Shown here one piece after another: positions 2,134-62,595 of a stretch of DNA of 64,000 bases. A model generated the notes under the pieces. The model did no database searches. It saw only the letters and a list, made by a program, of their open reading frames with translations, and was not told the origin of the DNA. How positions within the stretch are numbered: the stretch's first letter is position 1; every line of letters begins with the position of its first letter. Location of the stretch: sequence record NC_048674.1. One strand, written 5' to 3'. A program made the translations under genes and the position numbers.

Positions 2134-2985
2134 TTATTTCTTCATTACCATAGCCCATGTTTCTGGGTTTGGAATATAATCAGAAATCTTATTCACAATC
2201 TGTTTATCAAGTTCAGTTGCTTTCATCGGAGCTTTACCCTGTTGTTTAACTCTTATGTAGTTTGCTTCTTTAACATAAGAACCACCTTTACCAGATTTAG
2301 CAATAGAAGAGTCAACACCAATTTTATTGAATGCAATATACCAATCACCATCGGCATAACTCCGGGCACCTTCACCCATAGCCATTAGGTTTTTGAAGGT
2401 CATACTTGCACCCTCATGGGTTGCAACAAGAATTTCAACCGGTACAGTACGGGAACGTTCGGCGTTTTGTTTCATAGCAACGTTGATATCATTCATCACC
2501 CACACGATATGAACGTTTTCCTTGTTATAACCTAGTTCACGAACCTGTTTTGCAATTTGAGCCATCTTACCCATATCTTTAAGGGTAACGTCAAAGATCA
2601 AATTAGGTTTACGATCCTCTGGTGCAGCCAATACACCATTAAAAACACGTTTATCCATGTTCTTGGTTGTCTTGTATACATCAGATAGAAGGCTATGCAG
2701 AGTAGAAACGTTTTCTGGCTTCTTCAAGTCAAACTTGGATATATCGTGCCCGGTTTCTGCTTTAATGCGCCCAGCGAGCTTTGTGGAAGCCATAGCAAGC
2801 TCTTTTACACGGTCTACGTCTAGGGTAATACCTTCCAGACCAACTAGTTTAGAAGTAACAAATCCCTTTCCCGAACCGGCCCCACCAGCCAAGATCAAGA
2901 CGTTGTTAAACTTAGGATATGCCTTCTTTCCGAATACCATCAATTTTTCTTCCAATTGAACGAATTCACTAAATTTCATTTTCAT
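2134..2985 (-). CDS. P-loop kinase-like protein (AAA_33/zeta-like), possibly an internal head protein
   Basis: LAGGAGSGKG Walker A, TLDVD, LIFDVT, NAERSRTVP; N-terminus MKFSEFVQLEE; late promoter 3016-3022. Confidence 0.75.
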   Translation of the reverse strand: MKMKFSEFVQLEEKLMVFGKKAYPKFNNVLILAGGAGSGKGFVTSKLVGLEGITLDVDRVKELAMASTKLAGRIKAETGHDISKFDLKKPENVSTLHSLLSDVYKTTKNMDKRVFNGVLAAPEDRKPNLIFDVTLKDMGKMAQIAKQVRELGYNKENVHIVWVMNDINVAMKQNAERSRTVPVEILVATHEGASMTFKNLMAMGEGARSYADGDWYIAFNKIGVDSSIAKSGKGGSYVKEANYIRVKQQGKAPMKATELDKQIVNKISDYIPNPETWAMVMKK

Positions 2986-3018
2986 TTTAATTTTCCTATA
3001 GGTTGATTACCTTGGTAT

Positions 3019-3312
3019 TTAGGCATCTACCCAATAAGAAAACTCTTCAATCGTCTTGAATACCATCATCCGTTTGTCTTTGAATCTAGTAACAACAATA
3101 CCGGATTCCATAACACCAACAATATATTCACATACCATTTCACATGGTTCATCAATAAAGCAAGCTTTAGTATAGAAAGTTTTGATCTTGGTATAGTTAC
3201 CCATATCAACAACTTCTACCTTTTCGTAAGCTTCTTCGCAGATTTCAATAACACGTTTTACATCGTACATCTTTATATCCCTTTTTATTCTTATAGTTTC
3301 TTCACTATACAC
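3019..3312 (-). CDS. Hypothetical protein
   Basis: 97-aa ORF in tandem gene order. Confidence 0.65.
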   Translation of the reverse strand: MYSEETIRIKRDIKMYDVKRVIEICEEAYEKVEVVDMGNYTKIKTFYTKACFIDEPCEMVCEYIVGVMESGIVVTRFKDKRMMVFKTIEEFSYWVDA

Positions 3313-3348
3313 AAATGAAAATCCCCCGTCAATAGACGAGGGATGTTT

Positions 3349-12872: not shown

Positions 12873-13430
12873 TTACTTTTGGAATGGGTGTCCTGCACCA
12901 ATACCGACCGGGTTTTGTTTTGGTAGAATTTCCAAATCATTGACACCAACAACACTCATAGATGAATAACTAAACGTTACATTACCTATAAGGGCTGGGT
13001 TTCCGTCATCAACATAGGACAATTCTATATCGTCCAATGAACTCGGGAATGGGTCGTGAAACTTGAAAGTCAATACTATATTCTTTTTTGAGTTATCCAG
13101 AATATGAACCAAAATAGATCTAGGTCTAGCACCCGGTAGATGGGCAGTGGAATTGAAAGTTCTACTATCAGTAACAGAGATCATCCATTGATACAACTCT
13201 TTATAAGATTCGAAATTTTCATCAATCAAAAATCTAATCCTAAATGGTTCGTAAATGATCTTCGAACCCGGCATAAGCCCGGACGTCATCTGATTTATCG
13301 AAACCCTCGTTATATCCATTTCCATAGTTGGAAGAACAACGGATTGAGCTGATGTTACAAAGTTAGCGGTTGTGTTTGCGTCTGGGATTTCCAGACGCAT
13401 GTTTGTTATGTGTGCTTGATTATGTATCAT
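12873..13430 (-). CDS. gp3: Tail tube terminator gp3
   Basis: PGSKIIYEPFRIRFLIDENFESYKELYQWM...FHDPFPSSL. Confidence 0.9.
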   Translation of the reverse strand: MIHNQAHITNMRLEIPDANTTANFVTSAQSVVLPTMEMDITRVSINQMTSGLMPGSKIIYEPFRIRFLIDENFESYKELYQWMISVTDSRTFNSTAHLPGARPRSILVHILDNSKKNIVLTFKFHDPFPSSLDDIELSYVDDGNPALIGNVTFSYSSMSVVGVNDLEILPKQNPVGIGAGHPFQK

Positions 13431-15289
13431 GTTGACGGTTGAACTCCATATGAATATTGCGGTTGATCTGGTCTAAATTCACCAAAGCCAGACGGTAGAA
13501 CGGAATTCATACTGTTATATGTAGTATTATTTACAGCAGCCATTAAAGCACCTTCTTGTCGTCGTGCGTCTCGTTCTTCCTTTTCACGTTGTTGTTTAGC
13601 TCGGAATTCTTCAACCTCTTGGTTTCTTTTCTCAAGGGTTTTAAATACAGGCTCGGTTTCACCAGCCTTAATTTCATTCCCTAATTTAGATTCCGGTTGA
13701 GCTTCATTAGCATTAGCTTTCCCAAACAATGATCCAGTAAGACTTTCCCAAGCACCCTTAGCAGCATCAACACCCTTATCTAACAGCTCTGGGTTCTCTT
13801 TGGCGAAGTTATACAACTCATAAGCCATCAAGCCAGCACCAACAAAAGGAATTGCTCTACCAGCGACACGTACCGCCATACCGGCACCAGTCAATGCGCT
13901 TTTTGGTATAAATTTAGAGGCTGATTTTGCAGCATCGGCAGCAACAGACCAACCTTTTTTACCAAGATCCGCCGCCTTTGACAAAATACCAGCTTTCCCT
14001 TTAGGGGTAGGTGTCTTTGTTTTAGGGGTCTCTATTTTTGCTGGTTGTCCGGGTTTAGGTTCCGGTGTGGGTGTCTTCTTTCCATCGGGTGTTGTAGTTT
14101 TTGGAGACTTCTTAGGATCCTTCGATACATCGTTTGGATTAACCCCACCAGACGATGGTGTCGGGGTCTTACTTCCCAATCCCGGTATCTTATCAAACAA
14201 CCCAGAGAACTTAGCAATTAAACCACCAACAGCAGCAGATAGGGCACCCGCAATCATAGGAGCCAAACCAAGAACCGCACCAGATAGAACACTGATACCA
14301 GAAACAAGGCCACTAAGAACAAACCCAACACCACCAATCAATTTACCGATCAACATGGACATCTGGATACCTTTAAGAACATCGATTAAGCTTTTATGAC
14401 GCTTTTCGTTGTTCTCTCGTTCTCTTCCATTTTCTTGTCTTTCTTTCTTTTGCTCTTGGTTATTTCTATCTGTTTTTACTTTGTCTTCGGGTTTGTTTTG
14501 TGGGATCTGCTGGAATCTAGAAGTAGCATCAGCCTTCTTCTCTTCATAAGCCGCATTCGCTTTTGCATCTAATTTCTTTTCCTTACGTGCGTTATGTGCA
14601 TCGATAATAGACCCACCAACAAACTTCGTTGCATTAGCGGCCTGATTATAACCGGGAATAGTTGATAACAAATCGTTTATGGTTCCAGTAACCATACCGA
14701 TACCAGCGGACATAGTATGACCAAGTATTTTCGCTGTTGCTGATGTTTCTGATTTCTTCATTCGGTCAACTATATTAGCTTTTTTTGCTATCTCTCGAAC
14801 AAATTTACCAGTTTTTTGATTTTCTTCTTTGAAATTTTCCACAAATTCACGACGATCACCAACTTCTCGTTGTATAAATTCTTTCAAAGTCTCCCTAGTG
14901 TCTTCCTGCATAGGTTTGGCAGTTTCCCCCTGTTCTGGGTTCTGACTTTTTACACCTTGGCTATAATCCACTAGGGGTTGTTTATTATTTAAAATGTCTT
15001 CCAGTTGCTTTCGTCTAGCCGAAACTAATTCGTTTTCAACCTTATTACTACGCTTATTATCCTTTCTGGCACCTTTTATCTGGTTCGCTAATTTTTCTTG
15101 TTCTTGTGCGACTTCCAGACTGGAATCAGATGTAATATCATAAGACGCGGTAAGGTCTTTTGTTGAGTTGGACAACTTTTCTGTCTTGTCGTCCAACTTA
15201 AGCATCGAATCAGAAACAATATCCATAGCATCCGTGACATCTCGAACCGATTTATCAAGTTCGTTCTGTTTCTGCTTGTCAATCATCAC
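13427..15289 (-). CDS. gp29: Tape measure / baseplate hub gp29
   Basis: 620 aa, coiled coil, Gly-rich hydrophobic segment, P/K/T-rich linker; located after gp26 and before gp3. Confidence 0.75.
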   Translation of the reverse strand: MMIDKQKQNELDKSVRDVTDAMDIVSDSMLKLDDKTEKLSNSTKDLTASYDITSDSSLEVAQEQEKLANQIKGARKDNKRSNKVENELVSARRKQLEDILNNKQPLVDYSQGVKSQNPEQGETAKPMQEDTRETLKEFIQREVGDRREFVENFKEENQKTGKFVREIAKKANIVDRMKKSETSATAKILGHTMSAGIGMVTGTINDLLSTIPGYNQAANATKFVGGSIIDAHNARKEKKLDAKANAAYEEKKADATSRFQQIPQNKPEDKVKTDRNNQEQKKERQENGRERENNEKRHKSLIDVLKGIQMSMLIGKLIGGVGFVLSGLVSGISVLSGAVLGLAPMIAGALSAAVGGLIAKFSGLFDKIPGLGSKTPTPSSGGVNPNDVSKDPKKSPKTTTPDGKKTPTPEPKPGQPAKIETPKTKTPTPKGKAGILSKAADLGKKGWSVAADAAKSASKFIPKSALTGAGMAVRVAGRAIPFVGAGLMAYELYNFAKENPELLDKGVDAAKGAWESLTGSLFGKANANEAQPESKLGNEIKAGETEPVFKTLEKRNQEVEEFRAKQQREKEERDARRQEGALMAAVNNTTYNSMNSVLPSGFGEFRPDQPQYSYGVQPST

Positions 15290-15460
15290 TTAGTCCTTTT
15301 CTCTCGCCTGTTCTTTAAGATCGTTTAGGTAGAGGTGAACATAAACACCAAATTCAAAGGGGGTCATATCCTCAAGGTCCGAATGGCTCCATCCATCTTT
15401 TCTAAGCTTATATACCGTATTAAAATGATCGTATATGGTATGGTTAACAAGCGTTATGCG
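15290..15460 (-). CDS. Start-less 56-codon frame (gpT/GpE-prime-like extension of gp26)
   Basis: RITLVNH...GWSHSDLEDMTPFEFGVY...EKD; no ATG/GTG/TTG until codon 32; entered via T TTT TTC at 15460-15466. Confidence 0.7.
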   Translation of the reverse strand, partial: RITLVNHTIYDHFNTVYKLRKDGWSHSDLEDMTPFEFGVYVHLYLNDLKEQAREKD

Positions 15461-16239
15461 AAAAAACTTTCTACCCCTTTAAGTGTAACAATTTCTTGGT
15501 GTCCACATTTTTTACACTTTACAGGTATATTTAGAGTATGTTGGGGGAGGGATGTTACAAATTTACCCATTTTGGTCAAAGCAACTGAATCGGCGTATTC
15601 CATAATTTCAGAAATATCCTCATACGGAATATCAACACCAACCTTAACAACCTGATCTCCCATATGAACTTCGTCAATACAGCGATTGATTAAGTTAAAC
15701 AAGTCGGACTCAACTTCTACGTTGAAATATTCAACCTCGCTGATATTAGGATATCTCATATAAACTGTCATGTTCTCATTCAGAACAATTTTGTTATCTG
15801 GTGCATCCGACAATTTAGCGTTATTCAAGTTTACGTTTACTTTGATATCAGAGCCACAACGAATAATTTCACCATATTGGTCATATTGAACATTACCATC
15901 TTCATCGAGAATTTCGTTGGCGCAAGTAAACATAACCGGGACAGTTGGACTTGCTTTTGATAACTTATACAAAGCTAGATAAACTGCTTCCAAGTCAAAC
16001 ACAGGTAAAAGGTCTACATCAACATTATCAGTTAGGATACAGTTTTTTACGATTTGGATGATTGCATCATCGATTCCAGTATTGGCTTCGTTAGCTAACA
16101 TCAACAGTTTCATTTCTTTCATCAAGAAAGCACGAACCTTGATCTTTCTACCATCTGATAAAGTCACATTGGTCTGCTGTACGTTTTTCTGCATAGCAGC
16201 AAGAAGTACACTCTTGTCAATCGTGGTTTTGTTTGTCAT
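15454..16239 (-). CDS. gp26: Baseplate hub assembly protein / chaperone gp26
   Basis: VRAFLMKEMKLL, DLEAVYLALY, CKKCGH...LKGVESFFA; late promoter 16268-16274. Confidence 0.85.
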   Translation of the reverse strand: MTNKTTIDKSVLLAAMQKNVQQTNVTLSDGRKIKVRAFLMKEMKLLMLANEANTGIDDAIIQIVKNCILTDNVDVDLLPVFDLEAVYLALYKLSKASPTVPVMFTCANEILDEDGNVQYDQYGEIIRCGSDIKVNVNLNNAKLSDAPDNKIVLNENMTVYMRYPNISEVEYFNVEVESDLFNLINRCIDEVHMGDQVVKVGVDIPYEDISEIMEYADSVALTKMGKFVTSLPQHTLNIPVKCKKCGHQEIVTLKGVESFFA

Positions 16240-16312
16240 AGTTAAAAATCCCTTATAGATCTATACTTATTTAGTACATTGTAACATGATGTTCTTCAAG
16301 ACTTAATCTTAG

Positions 16313-16435
16313 ATAGTTTCACTTGCAATCAAACTATAAAGTCTCTATAAGTATTTATATAGAAAATCTATAATTAGAAAGAGTGTGAGCGAAGCGAACA
16401 GGCGGCTACGCCGTCTCACTACGTTCGAGATCTAT
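16313..16435. repeat. Dispersed repeat, copy 1 (AT-rich tract plus GC hairpin cluster)
   Basis: Reverse complement matches 58523-58643 with about 4 mismatches and a 2-nt indel. Confidence 0.92.
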
Positions 16436-16471: not shown

Positions 16472-17413
16472 TTAACGAATGGCTTTCACAACGCCTGTAG
16501 TACGTCTTATGATACTCTCTATAGAGTCGATGGTGTTCTCTTCACCCTTAGTAGGAACATGCACTGTGGTTGATACAGCGAATGTGACGGTAAAGGTTGC
16601 TACCTGAGAATTGTTCTCAAAATCTAGTTGAACTTCACCTACCTCTATGGGAAAGCACCCTGTATTATGTACCGTGGATTGCTTAACTCCATGACGGTCT
16701 AACGTGATGACGTCAATATCCTTTGCATACGTATTATAAAATCCAAATTGTCCATTTCTTGGGTTGACAATTGTATTCTGCCATGTTAGCATCAAAGAAC
16801 GTTCCTCATAAGAAGGGGAACAGTAAAACGTCATACTCATGGTTCCGTAGTTTCTACCTCTAACTTCGTGTCTAGGTAGTTTGTCTGTACGGTTGATTGT
16901 CGTTTCCAAAGTAGAACTAGGAAGACCGACACTCTTTACCATTAATGCTAGATCTCTGTTTACATCGTAATCAGTTCCCAAAAATCCATCAAGGATCTCT
17001 CCTGCTCCCGGTATGATCCGGATCAAGGACGGGTCCCAAGCACCAAAAATCTTCTTCATGCTAGGCGTGAGGATTTTGTGTGCTTGTCCCAAAGCAATGT
17101 CCTGAACTCTATGCCAAGCATAACTTGTACCAGAGAAAAGACTATCATTGACGTCCATCCCGCTACTTGAATCAGGAAATATTGGTAAATCCCTATCAAA
17201 AACACCATCACTGAATATAGAGGTTCGGAAATCTCCGAACCTTACAATAAACATGTTTGGTCTAGCCAAATCGGTATTCTCAACTTTCCGCATAAACCTA
17301 GTTAGATCGGGGATCTCGCTTGCATCCCCACCATCGTTTAATAAATCTTCACCAAACCCGATAGTACTATCTATCATACTATCTATGGTTGGAATAGGTG
17401 GTATTAAGTTCAT
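16472..17413 (-). CDS. gp54: Baseplate-tail tube initiator gp54
   Basis: DLARPNMFIVRF and LMVKSVGLP gp19-like fold motifs; start at the TAATG overlap with gp2. Confidence 0.85.
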   Translation of the reverse strand: MNLIPPIPTIDSMIDSTIGFGEDLLNDGGDASEIPDLTRFMRKVENTDLARPNMFIVRFGDFRTSIFSDGVFDRDLPIFPDSSSGMDVNDSLFSGTSYAWHRVQDIALGQAHKILTPSMKKIFGAWDPSLIRIIPGAGEILDGFLGTDYDVNRDLALMVKSVGLPSSTLETTINRTDKLPRHEVRGRNYGTMSMTFYCSPSYEERSLMLTWQNTIVNPRNGQFGFYNTYAKDIDVITLDRHGVKQSTVHNTGCFPIEVGEVQLDFENNSQVATFTVTFAVSTTVHVPTKGEENTIDSIESIIRRTTGVVKAIR

Positions 17414-18411
17414 TAGTATGATCTCCAAACGGAATTCGTATTATAGGTCTTCGGAGGAACACCAGATACAAACCGCTGAGTCGGTAGATTAATGACAGAA
17501 CTCCAATCCTGCGGTTTAATCTCCATTAATGGACCCTTAATATGACCCGGCAAATACGCTTTGATCATATGGTCTGCACCTCTCATTCCCTTAACCTTAC
17601 CCCAGTTGATATTTAGGGATGTACGGTTGGTAATCCTCTCTGTTGTTGCATGTTTCAGCAACTCTTCCATAAATTCTTTACGGGCTTTGATCGGGATATA
17701 GTGAAGGTTGAGACCCAACATCAAACCTTTGTGTTTTGCACTTAGGCCAAGATATACGATCAGGGGGAATTTATCCCAGTATGGTAGTGTTGCCTTATGT
17801 TTTGCGTCGTATGCGAAAGTATACAATCGACCAGCAATTGGTCTTGTTACTTGGTGACCACGAACGTTTTTCTTTATGAAATTGTTAAACCATTCCGTTG
17901 ACTTCTTCTGAGACTTTACAGGCTCTTTTTCGTGTTGTCTTACTTTATTTCTAAAGTCAGCCAACAACATCTGATATTTTTCGGCTTTAGATAGTTTTCT
18001 TCCGCTTATTTTCGCATCTTTTAACTTCTTAGCCAGTAGAATATCTTGCTTGAATCTTCTGAATGCCCGTTCCGTGGTTTCTTTATTAAGTCCACGTCCT
18101 TCAATATAATTTTTTAGAGTAATGCTACTCTTTTCTTTTTGTGTCAAATAATCAACACCAAGCTCAATCCATTGTTGTTTATTCTTGTTTGGGTTTACCA
18201 GAGAATAATAAGTCTTTATTTCTTCTCTGTGTCTGCGCATAGCTCTACTGAATGTTTCATAATTCAACCCTTTTTCCTCTGCATATTTCTTTGCAGTAAG
18301 ACTTGGGTTCTTTTTCTTGGCGTTCATATAATCAACACCAACATCAATCCATTGTTTTCTATTGCGTTTTTCTGTTGTGGACTCTGCACGTTCAGTTATT
18401 TCGAATATCAT
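17413..18411 (-). CDS. gp2: DNA end protector gp2 with duplicated N-terminal domain
   Basis: YTFAYDAKHKATLPYWDKFPLIVYLG, GLNLHYIP. Confidence 0.96.
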   Translation of the reverse strand: MIFEITERAESTTEKRNRKQWIDVGVDYMNAKKKNPSLTAKKYAEEKGLNYETFSRAMRRHREEIKTYYSLVNPNKNKQQWIELGVDYLTQKEKSSITLKNYIEGRGLNKETTERAFRRFKQDILLAKKLKDAKISGRKLSKAEKYQMLLADFRNKVRQHEKEPVKSQKKSTEWFNNFIKKNVRGHQVTRPIAGRLYTFAYDAKHKATLPYWDKFPLIVYLGLSAKHKGLMLGLNLHYIPIKARKEFMEELLKHATTERITNRTSLNINWGKVKGMRGADHMIKAYLPGHIKGPLMEIKPQDWSSVINLPTQRFVSGVPPKTYNTNSVWRSY

Positions 18412-61578: not shown

Positions 61579-62580
61579 TTAGAAATTTCCATCAAGGATA
61601 TTCATCCAGTGTTCCCGAACAAGTTCCCCTGCTAGGTTGTTCACTGCTTTACCTACATCAGAAGGACGTTCTGCATCTCGTAGATTTTTGCTGGTATCCT
61701 TCGTGAAATCTTCAATTGCGTCTTTCGAGAGGTTACCAGAAACCTTACCAAACTCTTTGGTGGTAGGGATCCCAATCTTACTGAGGACATTTTTAAGACG
61801 ATTCACGTTGATATATTCAGCAATCTCATGAACCATAGCAAGATCTGATTCACCCAGAGGCTCTTTTACCTTTACCGGTTTGTCAGATTTCCCTTTCTCT
61901 GTAAACTTGGAGTTTTTAGATTTGAAAATAGTCCGACCTTGACGGGTATAATGTGGGTCTACTGTCTTCGCAACAAACCCCTCCGCAATGTTATCAGTTC
62001 CTTCAACAAGATCGAATTTTCCTGCTTTGTTGCTTGGGATAACAACTGATTGGAAGTCGTTCGGGAGTTTTGTTACACCATCGAAATCCCCACGGTAGAT
62101 AACAGGGGCATGTTTGAAGATCCCATCGATTGCATCCATAACGAAATCGTGGGAGAGGTACATTCCAGTTTCACCAGAGAAAATGAAGATATCAAACACA
62201 TAAAAGTCTTGATCTCCATACTCTACTTCTTTTTGAATCATTTTTCCAGTAGTAAGATTACCGGCATATTCCCCGAAGATTGTAACTTGATCAACTTCTG
62301 GGTGTTTTTGTTTAACAAAGTTGTATACTTTTCGGGCATTATCATGATATTTCTTTACAATCAGGTCTGCTTCATAAAACTGGTCAAAATCACCAAGAAG
62401 ATCAGTTCGACGACCAGCCTGTACATGTTCATCATTTACAGCAAGTTGAAAATTAGTACCATGAATCTTTTCCATTGCAACCCATTCAACACCCTTTGCA
62501 GTATATCCGGAAGTTGCAAAAGAGTCGATGACGTTTTGACGATAGTGGTTCTCAAGAGAGTTATATTTTACAAAAATCAT
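61579..62580 (-). CDS. rnlB: RNA ligase 2
   Basis: KYNSLENHY, EKIHGTNF, FGEYAG, AEGFV, KSKN..F.EK. Confidence 0.96.
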   Translation of the reverse strand: MIFVKYNSLENHYRQNVIDSFATSGYTAKGVEWVAMEKIHGTNFQLAVNDEHVQAGRRTDLLGDFDQFYEADLIVKKYHDNARKVYNFVKQKHPEVDQVTIFGEYAGNLTTGKMIQKEVEYGDQDFYVFDIFIFSGETGMYLSHDFVMDAIDGIFKHAPVIYRGDFDGVTKLPNDFQSVVIPSNKAGKFDLVEGTDNIAEGFVAKTVDPHYTRQGRTIFKSKNSKFTEKGKSDKPVKVKEPLGESDLAMVHEIAEYINVNRLKNVLSKIGIPTTKEFGKVSGNLSKDAIEDFTKDTSKNLRDAERPSDVGKAVNNLAGELVREHWMNILDGNF

Positions 62581-62595
62581 ATTATTTCCTTTTAT

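What the first reader, a model, noticed from the sequence alone, without database searches (positions are those of the whole stretch)
15290..15466. Lambda G/GT-like programmed -1 frameshift in a T4-like phage (gp26 into a start-less frame before the tape measure)
Seen: gp26 ends GAA AGT TTT TTC GCA TAA, containing a canonical X XXY YYZ heptamer (T TTT TTC, 15466-15460). The -1 frame continues 56 codons (RITLVNH...GWSHSDLEDMTPFEFGVYVHLYL...) to a stop abutting the gp29 start. That frame has a stop just upstream and no ATG/GTG/TTG until codon 32. Known: lambda G/GT, P2 E/E-prime and Mu tail chaperones use such a shift directly upstream of the tape-measure gene; the W-x6-M-x3-E pattern resembles those extensions; as far as I recall, T4 itself is regarded as lacking the shift. 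Inference: gp26 here is a tail assembly chaperone made as a 261-aa and a ~316-aa form.
Basis: partly seen in the sequence, partly recalled or inferred. Interest (0 to 1): 0.8.

Follow-up and report, generated by a model that had tools for sequence, protein, structure and literature searches.

The report
Frameshifted tail chaperone gene, T4-type phage
In this Aeromonas T4-type phage the gp26 gene almost certainly makes a short and a long protein through a programmed -1 ribosomal slip on T TTT TTC; T4 encodes the two forms as separate genes (26 and 51), the mechanism was published for T4-like phages in 2022, and this phage's database record does not annotate it.

Summary
The window is Aeromonas phage AS-sw (Straboviridae, Ceceduovirus). 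gp26 (16239-15454, minus strand, 261 aa) ends with an in-phase T TTT TTC heptamer (15466-15460), then one codon, then the stop. The -1 frame runs 56 codons to a stop that abuts the next gene. It has a stop six codons upstream of the heptamer and no ATG/GTG/TTG before codon 32.

The extension is real coding sequence. It matches the C-terminal tail of T4 gp51 (phrog_634 E=1.7e-11; my extension HMM against T4 gp51 E=2.4e-8). T4 gp26 and gp51 are paralogues that share PF12322. So gp26 plus its -1 extension is collinear with T4 gp51, and AS-sw has no separate gene 51.

Among 99 gp26 loci outside T4 itself, 98 carry the heptamer. The terminal Phe-Phe is TTT TTC in 93 of 94 distinct sequences, against about 20% expected. 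The first -1 codon is Arg in 88 of 94, using all four CGN codons. The three Tevenvirinae examined (T4, Mineola, EcS1), which have gene 51, use non-slippery TTC TTT.

Papers citing Vladimirov, Gautam & Davidson (Virology 2022) show the kind is already described. The value here is an annotation correction. No fusion protein has been demonstrated experimentally for this phage.

The parts
16352..16359 (-). TATAAATA motif (T4-type late promoter consensus), about 113 nt upstream of the gp26 start. No such motif lies between gp26 and the downstream gene.
   Evidence: The window as a whole has 10 copies against 6.7 expected, so the motif alone is weak evidence. Its function as a late promoter is inferred from established T4 biology.
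16472..17428 (-). gp54-like tail-tube initiator (318 aa; annotated 'tail tube'), the gene upstream of gp26
   Evidence: phrog_45 E=1.1e-46 and PF06841 (below its cut-off). phmmer with T4 gp54 gives E=3.6e-8. RefSeq annotation.
15454..16239 (-). gp26 = short chaperone form (TAC-N), 261 aa, stop codon included
   Evidence: PF12322 T4_baseplate E=2.5e-54, covering residues 25-261. phrog_150 E=7.4e-59. BLASTP to T4 gp26 E=4e-13, aligned to the shared C-terminal F-F. AlphaFold2 model with mean pLDDT 85.7.
15474..15480 (-). Purine-rich AAAGGGG, 8-14 nt upstream of the heptamer. It is a possible Shine-Dalgarno-like stimulator and also encodes Lys-Gly.
   Evidence: GA(G/A)GG at -14 to -10 in 92 of 94 homologues. 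This does not discriminate, because the same bases encode a conserved Glu/Arg-Gly and T4, which has no shift, carries AGAGG there too.
15460..15466 (-). Slippery heptamer T TTT TTC (X XXY YYZ), with tRNA-Phe in both the P and A sites
   Evidence: It is present in 98 of 99 gp26 loci outside T4. The F-F codons are TTT TTC in 93 of 94 distinct sequences, against about 0.20 expected. The preceding codon always ends in T, across five different codons.
15454..15456 (-). Zero-frame stop (TAA), one sense codon after the heptamer
   Evidence: the spacing heptamer + one codon + stop is found in 96 of 99 loci. The stop itself varies: TAA 42, TAG 32, TGA 20.
15290..15460 (-). The -1-frame extension: 56 codons plus TAA. 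It is a Gp51_C-type domain and forms the C-terminal part of the long form (TAC-NC).
   Evidence: phrog_634 'baseplate hub assembly catalyst' E=1.7e-11. An HMM of 94 such extensions hits T4 gp51 residues ~207-246 at E=2.4e-8. The homologous ORF in L110 is labelled PF28602 Gp51_C. Entropy at codon positions 1/2/3 is 0.93/0.58/1.33 bits. There is no start codon before codon 32.
13427..15289 (-). Downstream 619/620-aa protein, the presumed tape measure (functional equivalent of gp29). Its start abuts the stop of the extension.
   Evidence: The assignment is by position, size and composition only. It matches phrog_11300, of unknown function. It has a coiled-coil-like N-terminus (weak SMC hit) and a hydrophobic segment at about residues 306-365. 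There is no detectable homology to T4 gp29. The equivalent ORF in 63 loci is 412-767 aa, median 582.
12873..13430 (-). gp3-like tail-tube terminator / sheath stabiliser (185 aa)
   Evidence: RefSeq annotation. PF06841 E=1.2e-6 and phrog_45 E=7.8e-35.

Best explanation
gp26 of Aeromonas phage AS-sw is the tail/hub assembly chaperone gene of a T4-type phage, and it is decoded in two ways.

Most ribosomes read F-F-A and stop, giving the 261-aa short form, which is equivalent to T4 gp26. A minority slip back one base on U UUU UUC, with the two tRNA-Phe re-pairing on UUU UUU. These ribosomes continue for 56 codons in the -1 frame and terminate where the next gene starts. The product is a ~316-aa long form whose C-terminal domain is homologous to the tail of T4 gp51.

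The Tevenvirinae examined (T4, Mineola, EcS1) make the same two architectures from two paralogous genes, 26 and 51, and have lost the slippery codons.

By analogy with lambda G/GT and with T4 genetics, the two forms are expected to act together on the downstream tape-measure-like protein and on the hub/tube initiator during tail assembly, and to be absent from the virion.

What is shown: the sequence anatomy, the homology, the conservation and the selection signatures. What is inferred: that the ribosome actually shifts, the ratio of the two forms, and the chaperone role.
For: (1) Anatomy.

(2) Collinearity with a natural single-frame long form. T4 gp26 and gp51 both match phrog_150 and PF12322. 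In gp51 the PF12322 match covers residues 1-201 and leaves a 48-residue tail. In the window's gp26 the same family ends at the last residue. The extension matches phrog_634, as does gp51 residues 147-246. The extension HMM hits gp51 residues ~207-246 at E=2.4e-8.

(3) Heptamer conservation. 98 of 99 loci carry it, spanning non-Tevenvirinae Straboviridae, Kyanoviridae, Otagovirus, Chakrabartyvirus, a Ralstonia phage and a Xanthomonas phage. The codons are TTT TTC in 93 of 94, against about 0.20 expected. The preceding wobble base is T in 94 of 94. Nearby wobble positions have a top-base share of only about 0.33-0.69.

(4) Selection in the -1 frame directly 3' of the slip. Arg occupies the first codon in 88 of 94 sequences, through CGG, CGC, CGA and CGT; the same bases read in the zero frame give G, A, V, D, E, S or L. 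An F-L variant has T TTT TTA with AGA = Arg.

(5) The extension evolves as coding sequence and stays open. The median open length is 179 nt past the stop, against 19 nt in the +1 frame.

(6) Negative controls. T4, Mineola and EcS1 have gene 51, encode F-F as TTC TTT, and have no extension.

(7) AS-sw has only one gp26-family gene and one extension in its whole genome. The same HMM detects both T4 paralogues.

(8) Literature.
Against: There is no direct evidence that the fusion protein exists in this or any sampled phage.

No stimulatory RNA structure lies downstream (z = 0.26; no consensus pairs), so efficiency may be low.

In 56 of 94 homologues, mostly cyanophage-type, an ATG sits at -1-frame codon 3, close to or overlapping the gp26 stop. 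In those lineages an independently initiated small protein is possible, and gene callers annotate one.

One relative, Vibrio phage D493, has CTT TTC instead of a canonical heptamer, yet keeps the open -1 frame.

Similarity of gp26 to solved tail assembly chaperones is weak: HK97 TAC 2ob9, probability 0.82 but E = 0.5.

The downstream protein is a tape measure by position only.
Confidence: 0.85

Rival explanations
1. The extension is a separate small gene: a free Gp51_C-type protein of about 55 aa. It would be translated by its own initiation or by termination-reinitiation coupling at the gp26 stop, and not as a fusion.
For: Several records annotate such ORFs: PX29 with a TTG start at the junction, phiAS5 and phage 65 with internal starts, and the KVP40-like PG216 and the L110 contig with an ATG overlapping the stop. 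An ATG occupies -1-frame codon 3 in 56 of 94 loci.
Against: In AS-sw and its relatives there is no ATG/GTG/TTG until codon 32, although codons 1-31 are conserved as protein. The junction codon varies (ATA, TTA, CTG, CTG, TTG).

The Arg codon that precedes every candidate ATG is conserved in the -1 frame with synonymous variation.

This model gives no reason for the invariant T TTT TTC or for the wobble T before it.

The homologous T4 gp51 carries this domain covalently joined to the gp26-like domain.
Confidence: 0.07
2. The long form arises from transcriptional slippage: RNA polymerase drops one U on the T6 run, and the ribosome does not shift.
For: The site is a homopolymeric run of six T. 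The outcome, a -1 reading, would be identical at the protein level. Nothing here separates the two mechanisms directly.
Against: Six residues is short for efficient polymerase slippage; from my own knowledge, known cases usually need about nine. This model needs only a run, not codon phase, yet the run is always in exact X XXY YYZ phase with the wobble T of the preceding codon. Variants keep the heptamer rule (TTTTTTA, TTTTTTT) and do not lengthen the run.
Confidence: 0.04
3. The extension is a decaying remnant of a former gene 51 and has no product.
For: It is unannotated in the AS-sw record and has no start codon.
Against: It is open in 98 of 99 loci across very divergent phages. Its variability by codon position is typical of purifying selection. 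It has more than 20 columns with at least 85% residue conservation. AS-sw has no other copy of this domain, which is essential in T4.
Confidence: 0.01

Closest known systems
[quoted passage not shown]
   Same: It is the same gene family and the same logic. As summarised by citing papers, TAC-N genes of T4-like phages carry poly-T -1 frameshift signals, while some T4-like phages instead carry a short gene plus a separate long fused gene. That matches what I found independently: gp26 plus a -1 extension in AS-sw, against genes 26 and 51 in T4.
   Different: I could not read the paper itself, so I cannot say whether Ceceduovirus / AS-sw was among its examples. I also cannot say whether it reports the details seen here: Arg conserved at the first shifted codon, the fixed heptamer-codon-stop spacing, and the F-L / TTTTTTA variants.
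T4 gp26 and gp51 (hub assembly chaperones)
   Same: The window's gp26 is homologous to T4 gp26 up to the shared C-terminal F-F. The extension is homologous to the C-terminal ~40 residues of gp51. In T4 both are listed as hub assembly chaperones, and gp51 is essential but absent from the particle (PMC3004832).
   Different: T4 uses two divergently transcribed paralogous genes, located away from gene 29. It encodes F-F as TTC TTT, and gene 25 follows gene 26 directly. AS-sw has one gene, placed between the gp54-like gene and the tape-measure-like gene, and needs recoding to make the long form.
Lambda G/GT (and P2 E/E', Mu) tail assembly chaperone frameshift; Xu, Hendrix & Duda, Mol Cell 2004
   Same: There are two overlapping frames just upstream of the tape-measure gene, and a canonical X XXY YYZ heptamer near the end of the first frame. 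No stimulatory RNA structure is evident, and the result is a short major form plus a long minor form. From my own knowledge, P2 also uses a poly-T heptamer.
   Different: No sequence similarity to these proteins was found. Structural similarity to a solved siphovirus TAC (HK97, 2ob9) is only weak. gp26 is roughly twice the size of typical G-like proteins and has conserved Cys pairs resembling a zinc ribbon. The gene upstream is the tube initiator (gp54-like), not the major tube gene.
E. coli dnaX -1 frameshift
   Same: It is a tandem-slippage heptamer with a Shine-Dalgarno-like element about 10 nt upstream. Here GA(G/A)GG lies at -14 to -10 in 92 of 94 loci.
   Different: dnaX also has a strong downstream hairpin; none is present here. 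The purine-rich element here also encodes conserved residues and occurs in T4, which does not shift, so its role as a stimulator is unproven.

Membership tests
T4 gp26/gp51 family (PF12322 T4_baseplate, with or without Gp51_C) | PF12322 domain above the gathering score | tested here: met
   E=2.5e-54 and 184.7 bits against a cut-off of 24.5. Residues 25-261 match profile positions 6-219 of 219. phrog_150 E=7.4e-59.
T4 gp26/gp51 family (PF12322 T4_baseplate, with or without Gp51_C) | C-terminal Gp51_C-type domain following the PF12322 domain (the long form) | tested here: met
   The domain is present, but in the -1 frame. phrog_634 E=1.7e-11. The extension HMM against T4 gp51 residues ~207-246 gives E=2.4e-8. 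The homologous small ORF in L110 carries the precomputed label PF28602 Gp51_C. That model is absent from the local Pfam copy, so it was not scored directly.
T4 gp26/gp51 family (PF12322 T4_baseplate, with or without Gp51_C) | Acts in hub/tail assembly and is absent from the mature particle | not testable with these tools
   This is known for T4 gp51 (PMC3004832). It is inferred here from homology.
Programmed -1 frameshift tail assembly chaperones (lambda G/GT type) | [quoted passage not shown] | tested here: met
   T TTT TTC at 15466-15460. It is found in 98 of 99 loci, and the codon choice is far from expectation.
Programmed -1 frameshift tail assembly chaperones (lambda G/GT type) | A second frame that overlaps the first, lacks its own start, and is conserved as protein | tested here: met
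   There is no start before codon 32 and a stop lies six codons upstream of the heptamer. In 56 of 94 relatives an ATG at codon 3 exists, so the 'no own start' criterion is not universal in the family.
Programmed -1 frameshift tail assembly chaperones (lambda G/GT type) | Location between the tail tube gene and the tape-measure gene | tested here: inconclusive
   The upstream gene is the gp54-like tube initiator, which has a gp19-type fold family. The downstream 619-aa protein fits a tape measure by size, position and composition, but shows no homology to T4 gp29 or to any named tape-measure family.
Programmed -1 frameshift tail assembly chaperones (lambda G/GT type) | Sequence or fold homology to characterised TACs (lambda G, HK97 TAC) | tested here: inconclusive
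   No Pfam TAC family is hit and no PDB sequence hit was found. Foldseek finds HK97 TAC 2ob9 at probability 0.82, E = 0.5, target-normalised TM 0.50 over 105 columns. YqbN (3klu) and PLE ORF19 (5ir0) are weaker still.
Programmed -1 frameshift tail assembly chaperones (lambda G/GT type) | Both the short and the fused long protein are made, at a fixed low ratio | not testable with these tools
   This needs proteomics or ribosome profiling of infected cells.

The most novel reading that the evidence does not exclude
The frameshift signal may be a compact, structure-free module in which the nearly invariant spacing 'heptamer + one sense codon + stop' (96 of 99 loci) is itself stimulatory. The upstream GA(G/A)GG at -14 to -10 may contribute as well. 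Under this reading a slow termination context helps drive the slip.

In lineages with an ATG at shifted codon 3, three products may then be made: the short form, the fused long form, and a free Gp51_C peptide. Whether this was already discussed in the 2022 paper could not be checked.
Probability: 0.25. Interest if true: 0.4.

Novelty: already known. Interest (0 to 1): 0.3.

Why it matters
**Annotation.** The RefSeq record of AS-sw, and every one of the roughly 20 related records I inspected, either leaves this stretch blank or calls a short 'hypothetical protein' with an arbitrary start. The correct description is one gene with two products.

**T4 biology.** The finding links T4's gp51, which the 2010 T4 tail review called 'essential, of unknown function', to the universal long form of tail assembly chaperones. 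It also shows two evolutionary solutions to the same need: recoding in most T4-type lineages, and gene duplication in the Tevenvirinae.

**Scale.** The family is very large, with 2,057 clusters at 50% identity, so the mis-annotation is widespread in marine cyanophage and metagenome data.

None of this is conceptually new after Vladimirov et al. 2022.

Tried and rejected
- **Direct BLASTP, extension against T4 gp51.** No significant alignment. The homology shows only at profile level.
- **Direct BLASTP, window gp26 against T4 gp51.** Not significant.
- **hhalign, downstream-protein family against T4 gp29.** No similarity. NCBIfam and PDB sequence searches for that protein gave nothing useful.
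- **Downstream RNA stimulator.** The single-sequence fold has z = 0.26, and RNAalifold on ten diverse junctions gives zero pairs. I rejected this idea.
- **The search for related loci with the 13-sequence alignment.** It failed because no stretch was conserved enough. Lineage-specific subsets worked.
- **Full text of Vladimirov et al. 2022 and of the KVP40 genome paper.** Neither is held. I relied on what citing papers say.
- **PF28602 (Gp51_C).** The model is not in the local Pfam copy.
- **Folding or searching the fused long form.** I did not do this.

Full report
**Identity of the window.** The region 13400-16300 is 100% identical to Aeromonas phage AS-sw (NC_048674; Straboviridae, Emmerichvirinae, Ceceduovirus). 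The window corresponds to record positions 62001-126000. On the minus strand the gene order is:
- gp4 (head closure)
- gp2 (DNA end protector)
- a gp54-like 'tail tube' protein (17428-16472)
- gp26 'baseplate hub subunit' (16239-15454)
- 165 unannotated bases
- a 619-aa 'hypothetical protein' (15286/15289-13427)
- gp3 (13430-12873)

This differs from T4. There, genes 3 and 2 are adjacent, and genes 26, 51, 27, 28, 29, 48 and 54 lie elsewhere.

**The observation.**
- gp26 ends GAA AGT TTT TTC GCA TAA.
- T TTT TTC (15466-15460) is in X XXY YYZ phase.
- The -1 frame has a TAA six codons upstream of the heptamer. After the heptamer it runs 56 sense codons (15460-15293) to TAA (15292-15290), which abuts the start of the next gene.
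- Its first ATG/GTG/TTG is codon 32.
- TTTTTTC is under-represented in the window: 18 copies against 32 expected.
- gp26 is the only one of 108 long ORFs that combines a terminal in-phase heptamer with at least 50 open -1 codons.

**What the extension is.** The 56-aa piece, searched on its own, matches phrog_634 'baseplate hub assembly catalyst' (E=1.7e-11, profile positions 58-112 of 121). That is the annotation used for T4 gp51.

T4 gp51 (249 aa) and T4 gp26 (208 aa) both match phrog_150, and only gp51 also matches phrog_634 (residues 147-246). The two are paralogues (BLASTP E=2e-6). In Pfam, PF12322 covers gp51 residues 1-201 and stops there, leaving a 48-residue tail. In the window's gp26 the same family ends exactly at the last residue.

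An HMM that I built only from 94 -1-frame extensions hits T4 gp51 at residues ~207-246 with E=2.4e-8. In a metagenomic relative, the small ORF after gp26 carries the precomputed label PF28602 'Gp51_C'.

So gp26 alone has the architecture of T4 gp26, and gp26 followed by the -1 extension has the architecture of T4 gp51.

**Comparative test of the shift site.** tblastn found the extension in 38 phage records, always starting 7 nt before the end of the gp26 stop (loci).

I assembled 99 gp26 loci: 12 from GenBank records spanning many lineages, 80 environmental cyanophage-type contigs, and 7 Aeromonas-type contigs. The results were as follows.
- 98 of 99 carry the heptamer. It is TTTTTTC in 97, of which 96 have exactly one sense codon before the stop, and TTTTTTT in 1.
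- Among 94 distinct sequences, the terminal F-F is TTT TTC in 93. Phe codon usage elsewhere in the same genes (644 TTT : 243 TTC) predicts about 20%.
- The preceding codon is AGT, TCT, GAT, AAT or GCT, so it always ends in T.
- The following codon and the stop (TAA 42, TAG 32, TGA 20) vary freely.
- Neighbouring wobble positions have a top-base share of only 0.33-0.69.
- The sample is diverse. The median identity over the C-terminal 100 residues is 0.51 and the minimum is 0.06.

**Selection in the shifted frame.** The first -1 codon after the heptamer is Arg in 88 of 94 sequences. It is encoded by CGG (46), CGC (29), CGA (7) and CGT (6). The same nucleotides read in the zero frame give G, A, V, D, S, E or L. 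An F-L variant has T TTT TTA followed by AGA, so both the slipperiness and the Arg are preserved through different bases.

Entropy at codon positions 1, 2 and 3 of the extension is 0.93, 0.58 and 1.33 bits, and more than 20 columns are at least 85% conserved. The -1 frame stays open for a median of 179 nt past the gp26 stop, against 19 nt for the +1 frame. It ends overlapping or abutting the start of a long ORF of 412-767 aa.

**Negative controls.** T4, Klebsiella phage Mineola and Escherichia phage EcS1 (all Tevenvirinae) have a separate gene 51. They encode the equivalent F-F as TTC TTT, and gene 25 follows directly with no extension.

Conversely, a six-frame HMM search of the complete AS-sw genome finds exactly one gp26-family ORF and one extension. 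The same HMM, built without Tevenvirinae members, detects both T4 gp26 (E=1.5e-28) and T4 gp51 (E=2.9e-5). AS-sw therefore has no other way to make a gp51-type protein, and gp51 is essential in T4 (PMC3004832).

**Signals around the site.** No downstream RNA structure is evident (z = 0.26; no consensus pairs in ten diverse junctions). This is usual for phage tail-chaperone shifts. A purine-rich GA(G/A)GG lies 10-14 nt upstream in 92 of 94 loci. Its spacing resembles the dnaX Shine-Dalgarno-like stimulator, but it also encodes conserved residues and is present in T4, so it proves nothing. A TATAAATA late-promoter motif lies about 113 nt upstream of gp26, with none between gp26 and the downstream gene. 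This suggests that the three reading frames are co-transcribed.

**Function.**
- An AlphaFold2 model of gp26 is confident, with mean pLDDT 85.7.
- No PDB structure matches it significantly. Among the weak hits, the one with the highest probability is the HK97 tail assembly chaperone 2ob9 (probability 0.82, E = 0.5).
- In BFVD the fold recurs in 44 viral proteins at E <= 0.001, including proteins named gp26 and 'baseplate hub assembly chaperone/catalyst' and proteins of several jumbo phages.
- The downstream 619-aa protein has no detectable homology to T4 gp29. I call it the tape measure from its position, its size, its coiled-coil-like N-terminus and its central hydrophobic segment. That identification is an inference.

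**Rivals.**
- *Independent initiation* of a free small protein is plausible only in lineages with an ATG at shifted codon 3 (56 of 94 loci). It cannot explain the start-less AS-sw arrangement, the conserved Arg upstream of that ATG, or the invariant heptamer.
- *Transcriptional slippage* on six T's cannot be excluded by sequence alone. It does not require the strict codon phase that is observed.
- *A decaying pseudogene* is contradicted by the conservation data.

**Prior knowledge.**
- The 2010 T4 tail review lists gp26 and gp51 as hub assembly chaperones and mentions no frameshift.
- The PRFect paper summarises Vladimirov, Gautam & Davidson (Virology 2022) as showing that some T4-like phages carry a short TAC gene plus a separate longer fused gene instead of frameshifting.
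- A 2025 paper cites the same work for poly-T -1 frameshift signals in TAC-N genes of T4-like phages.
- I could not obtain the 2022 paper itself.

Taken together, the phenomenon is published. What I add here is independent verification for this phage, quantitative conservation statistics, and the observation that none of the public records I inspected annotates a frameshift here.

**Verdict.** My confidence is about 0.85 that a -1 ribosomal frameshift makes a gp26-Gp51_C long form. For novelty I rate it already known, and unannotated in this genome. Interest is modest.

Noticed in passing
L108:2132-3088 (Vibrio phage D493, OZ195930): The gp26 homologue ends ...L-F-K, encoded CTT TTC AAG, so there is no canonical X XXY YYZ heptamer. 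The -1 frame is still open for 57 codons past the stop. The next large gene is gp5-like, not a tape-measure-like ORF. This may be a different slip site or a different expression mode.
   Followed up: partly
L006:6349-6404 (T4 genes 27/28) and T4 gp26: T4 gene 28 starts 56 nt inside gene 27. T4 gp26 also weakly matches the gp28 family phrog_1140 (E=9e-4). gp28, the gene directly upstream of T4 gene 29, might therefore be a third distant paralogue of the gp26/gp51 chaperone family. phmmer found no gp28 homologue in AS-sw.
   Followed up: partly
window 61582-62595, minus strand: A long stop-to-stop ORF carries an in-phase A AAT TTC heptamer in its last five codons, with a 30-codon open -1 frame. 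This is probably chance. I did not examine it.
   Followed up: no
window, whole: TTTTTTC is under-represented on both strands: 18 copies against 32.2 +/- 6.1 expected, and all 100 shuffles had at least 18. This is consistent with general avoidance of slippery runs.
   Followed up: no
window 15454-16239 (gp26 protein): Six Cys are invariant among close homologues: C67, C106, C128, C187, C242 and C245. C106 is also invariant across the 13 diverse sequences. There are weak zinc-ribbon Pfam hits at residues 238-252. The model shows beta-hairpins at these positions. A zinc-binding site in a tail chaperone would be unusual.
   Followed up: no
P0130: An 864-aa protein carries the gp26 domain at its C-terminus (residues 614-864). 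This appears to be a fusion of the chaperone domain to a large N-terminal part of unknown nature.
   Followed up: no
BFVD hits: The gp26 fold is found well beyond T4-type phages, with probability 1.0. Examples are Campylobacter CP220, Bacillus SP-15, Ralstonia phiRSL1 and RP12, Pseudomonas PaBG, and Erwinia jumbo phages. Many of these proteins are 300-680 aa long. This suggests single-frame long forms, or fusions, in other myovirus lineages.
   Followed up: no
L103:38197-40889 (AS-sw record 164197-166889, outside the window): The DNA polymerase is annotated as two adjacent CDS that overlap by 4 nt. The topoisomerase II large subunit and the UvsW-like helicase are also annotated in pieces. From my own knowledge, split replication genes are known in this phage group.
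   Followed up: no
L009 (Vibrio phage PG216, KVP40-like), feature 2477-3322: The record's note on gp26 already says 'similar to a 40 amino acid stretch at the C-terminus of T4 ... gp51' (truncated in the output). Early annotators of KVP40-type genomes therefore saw the gp51 link, but annotated a separate 55-aa ORF.
   Followed up: partly
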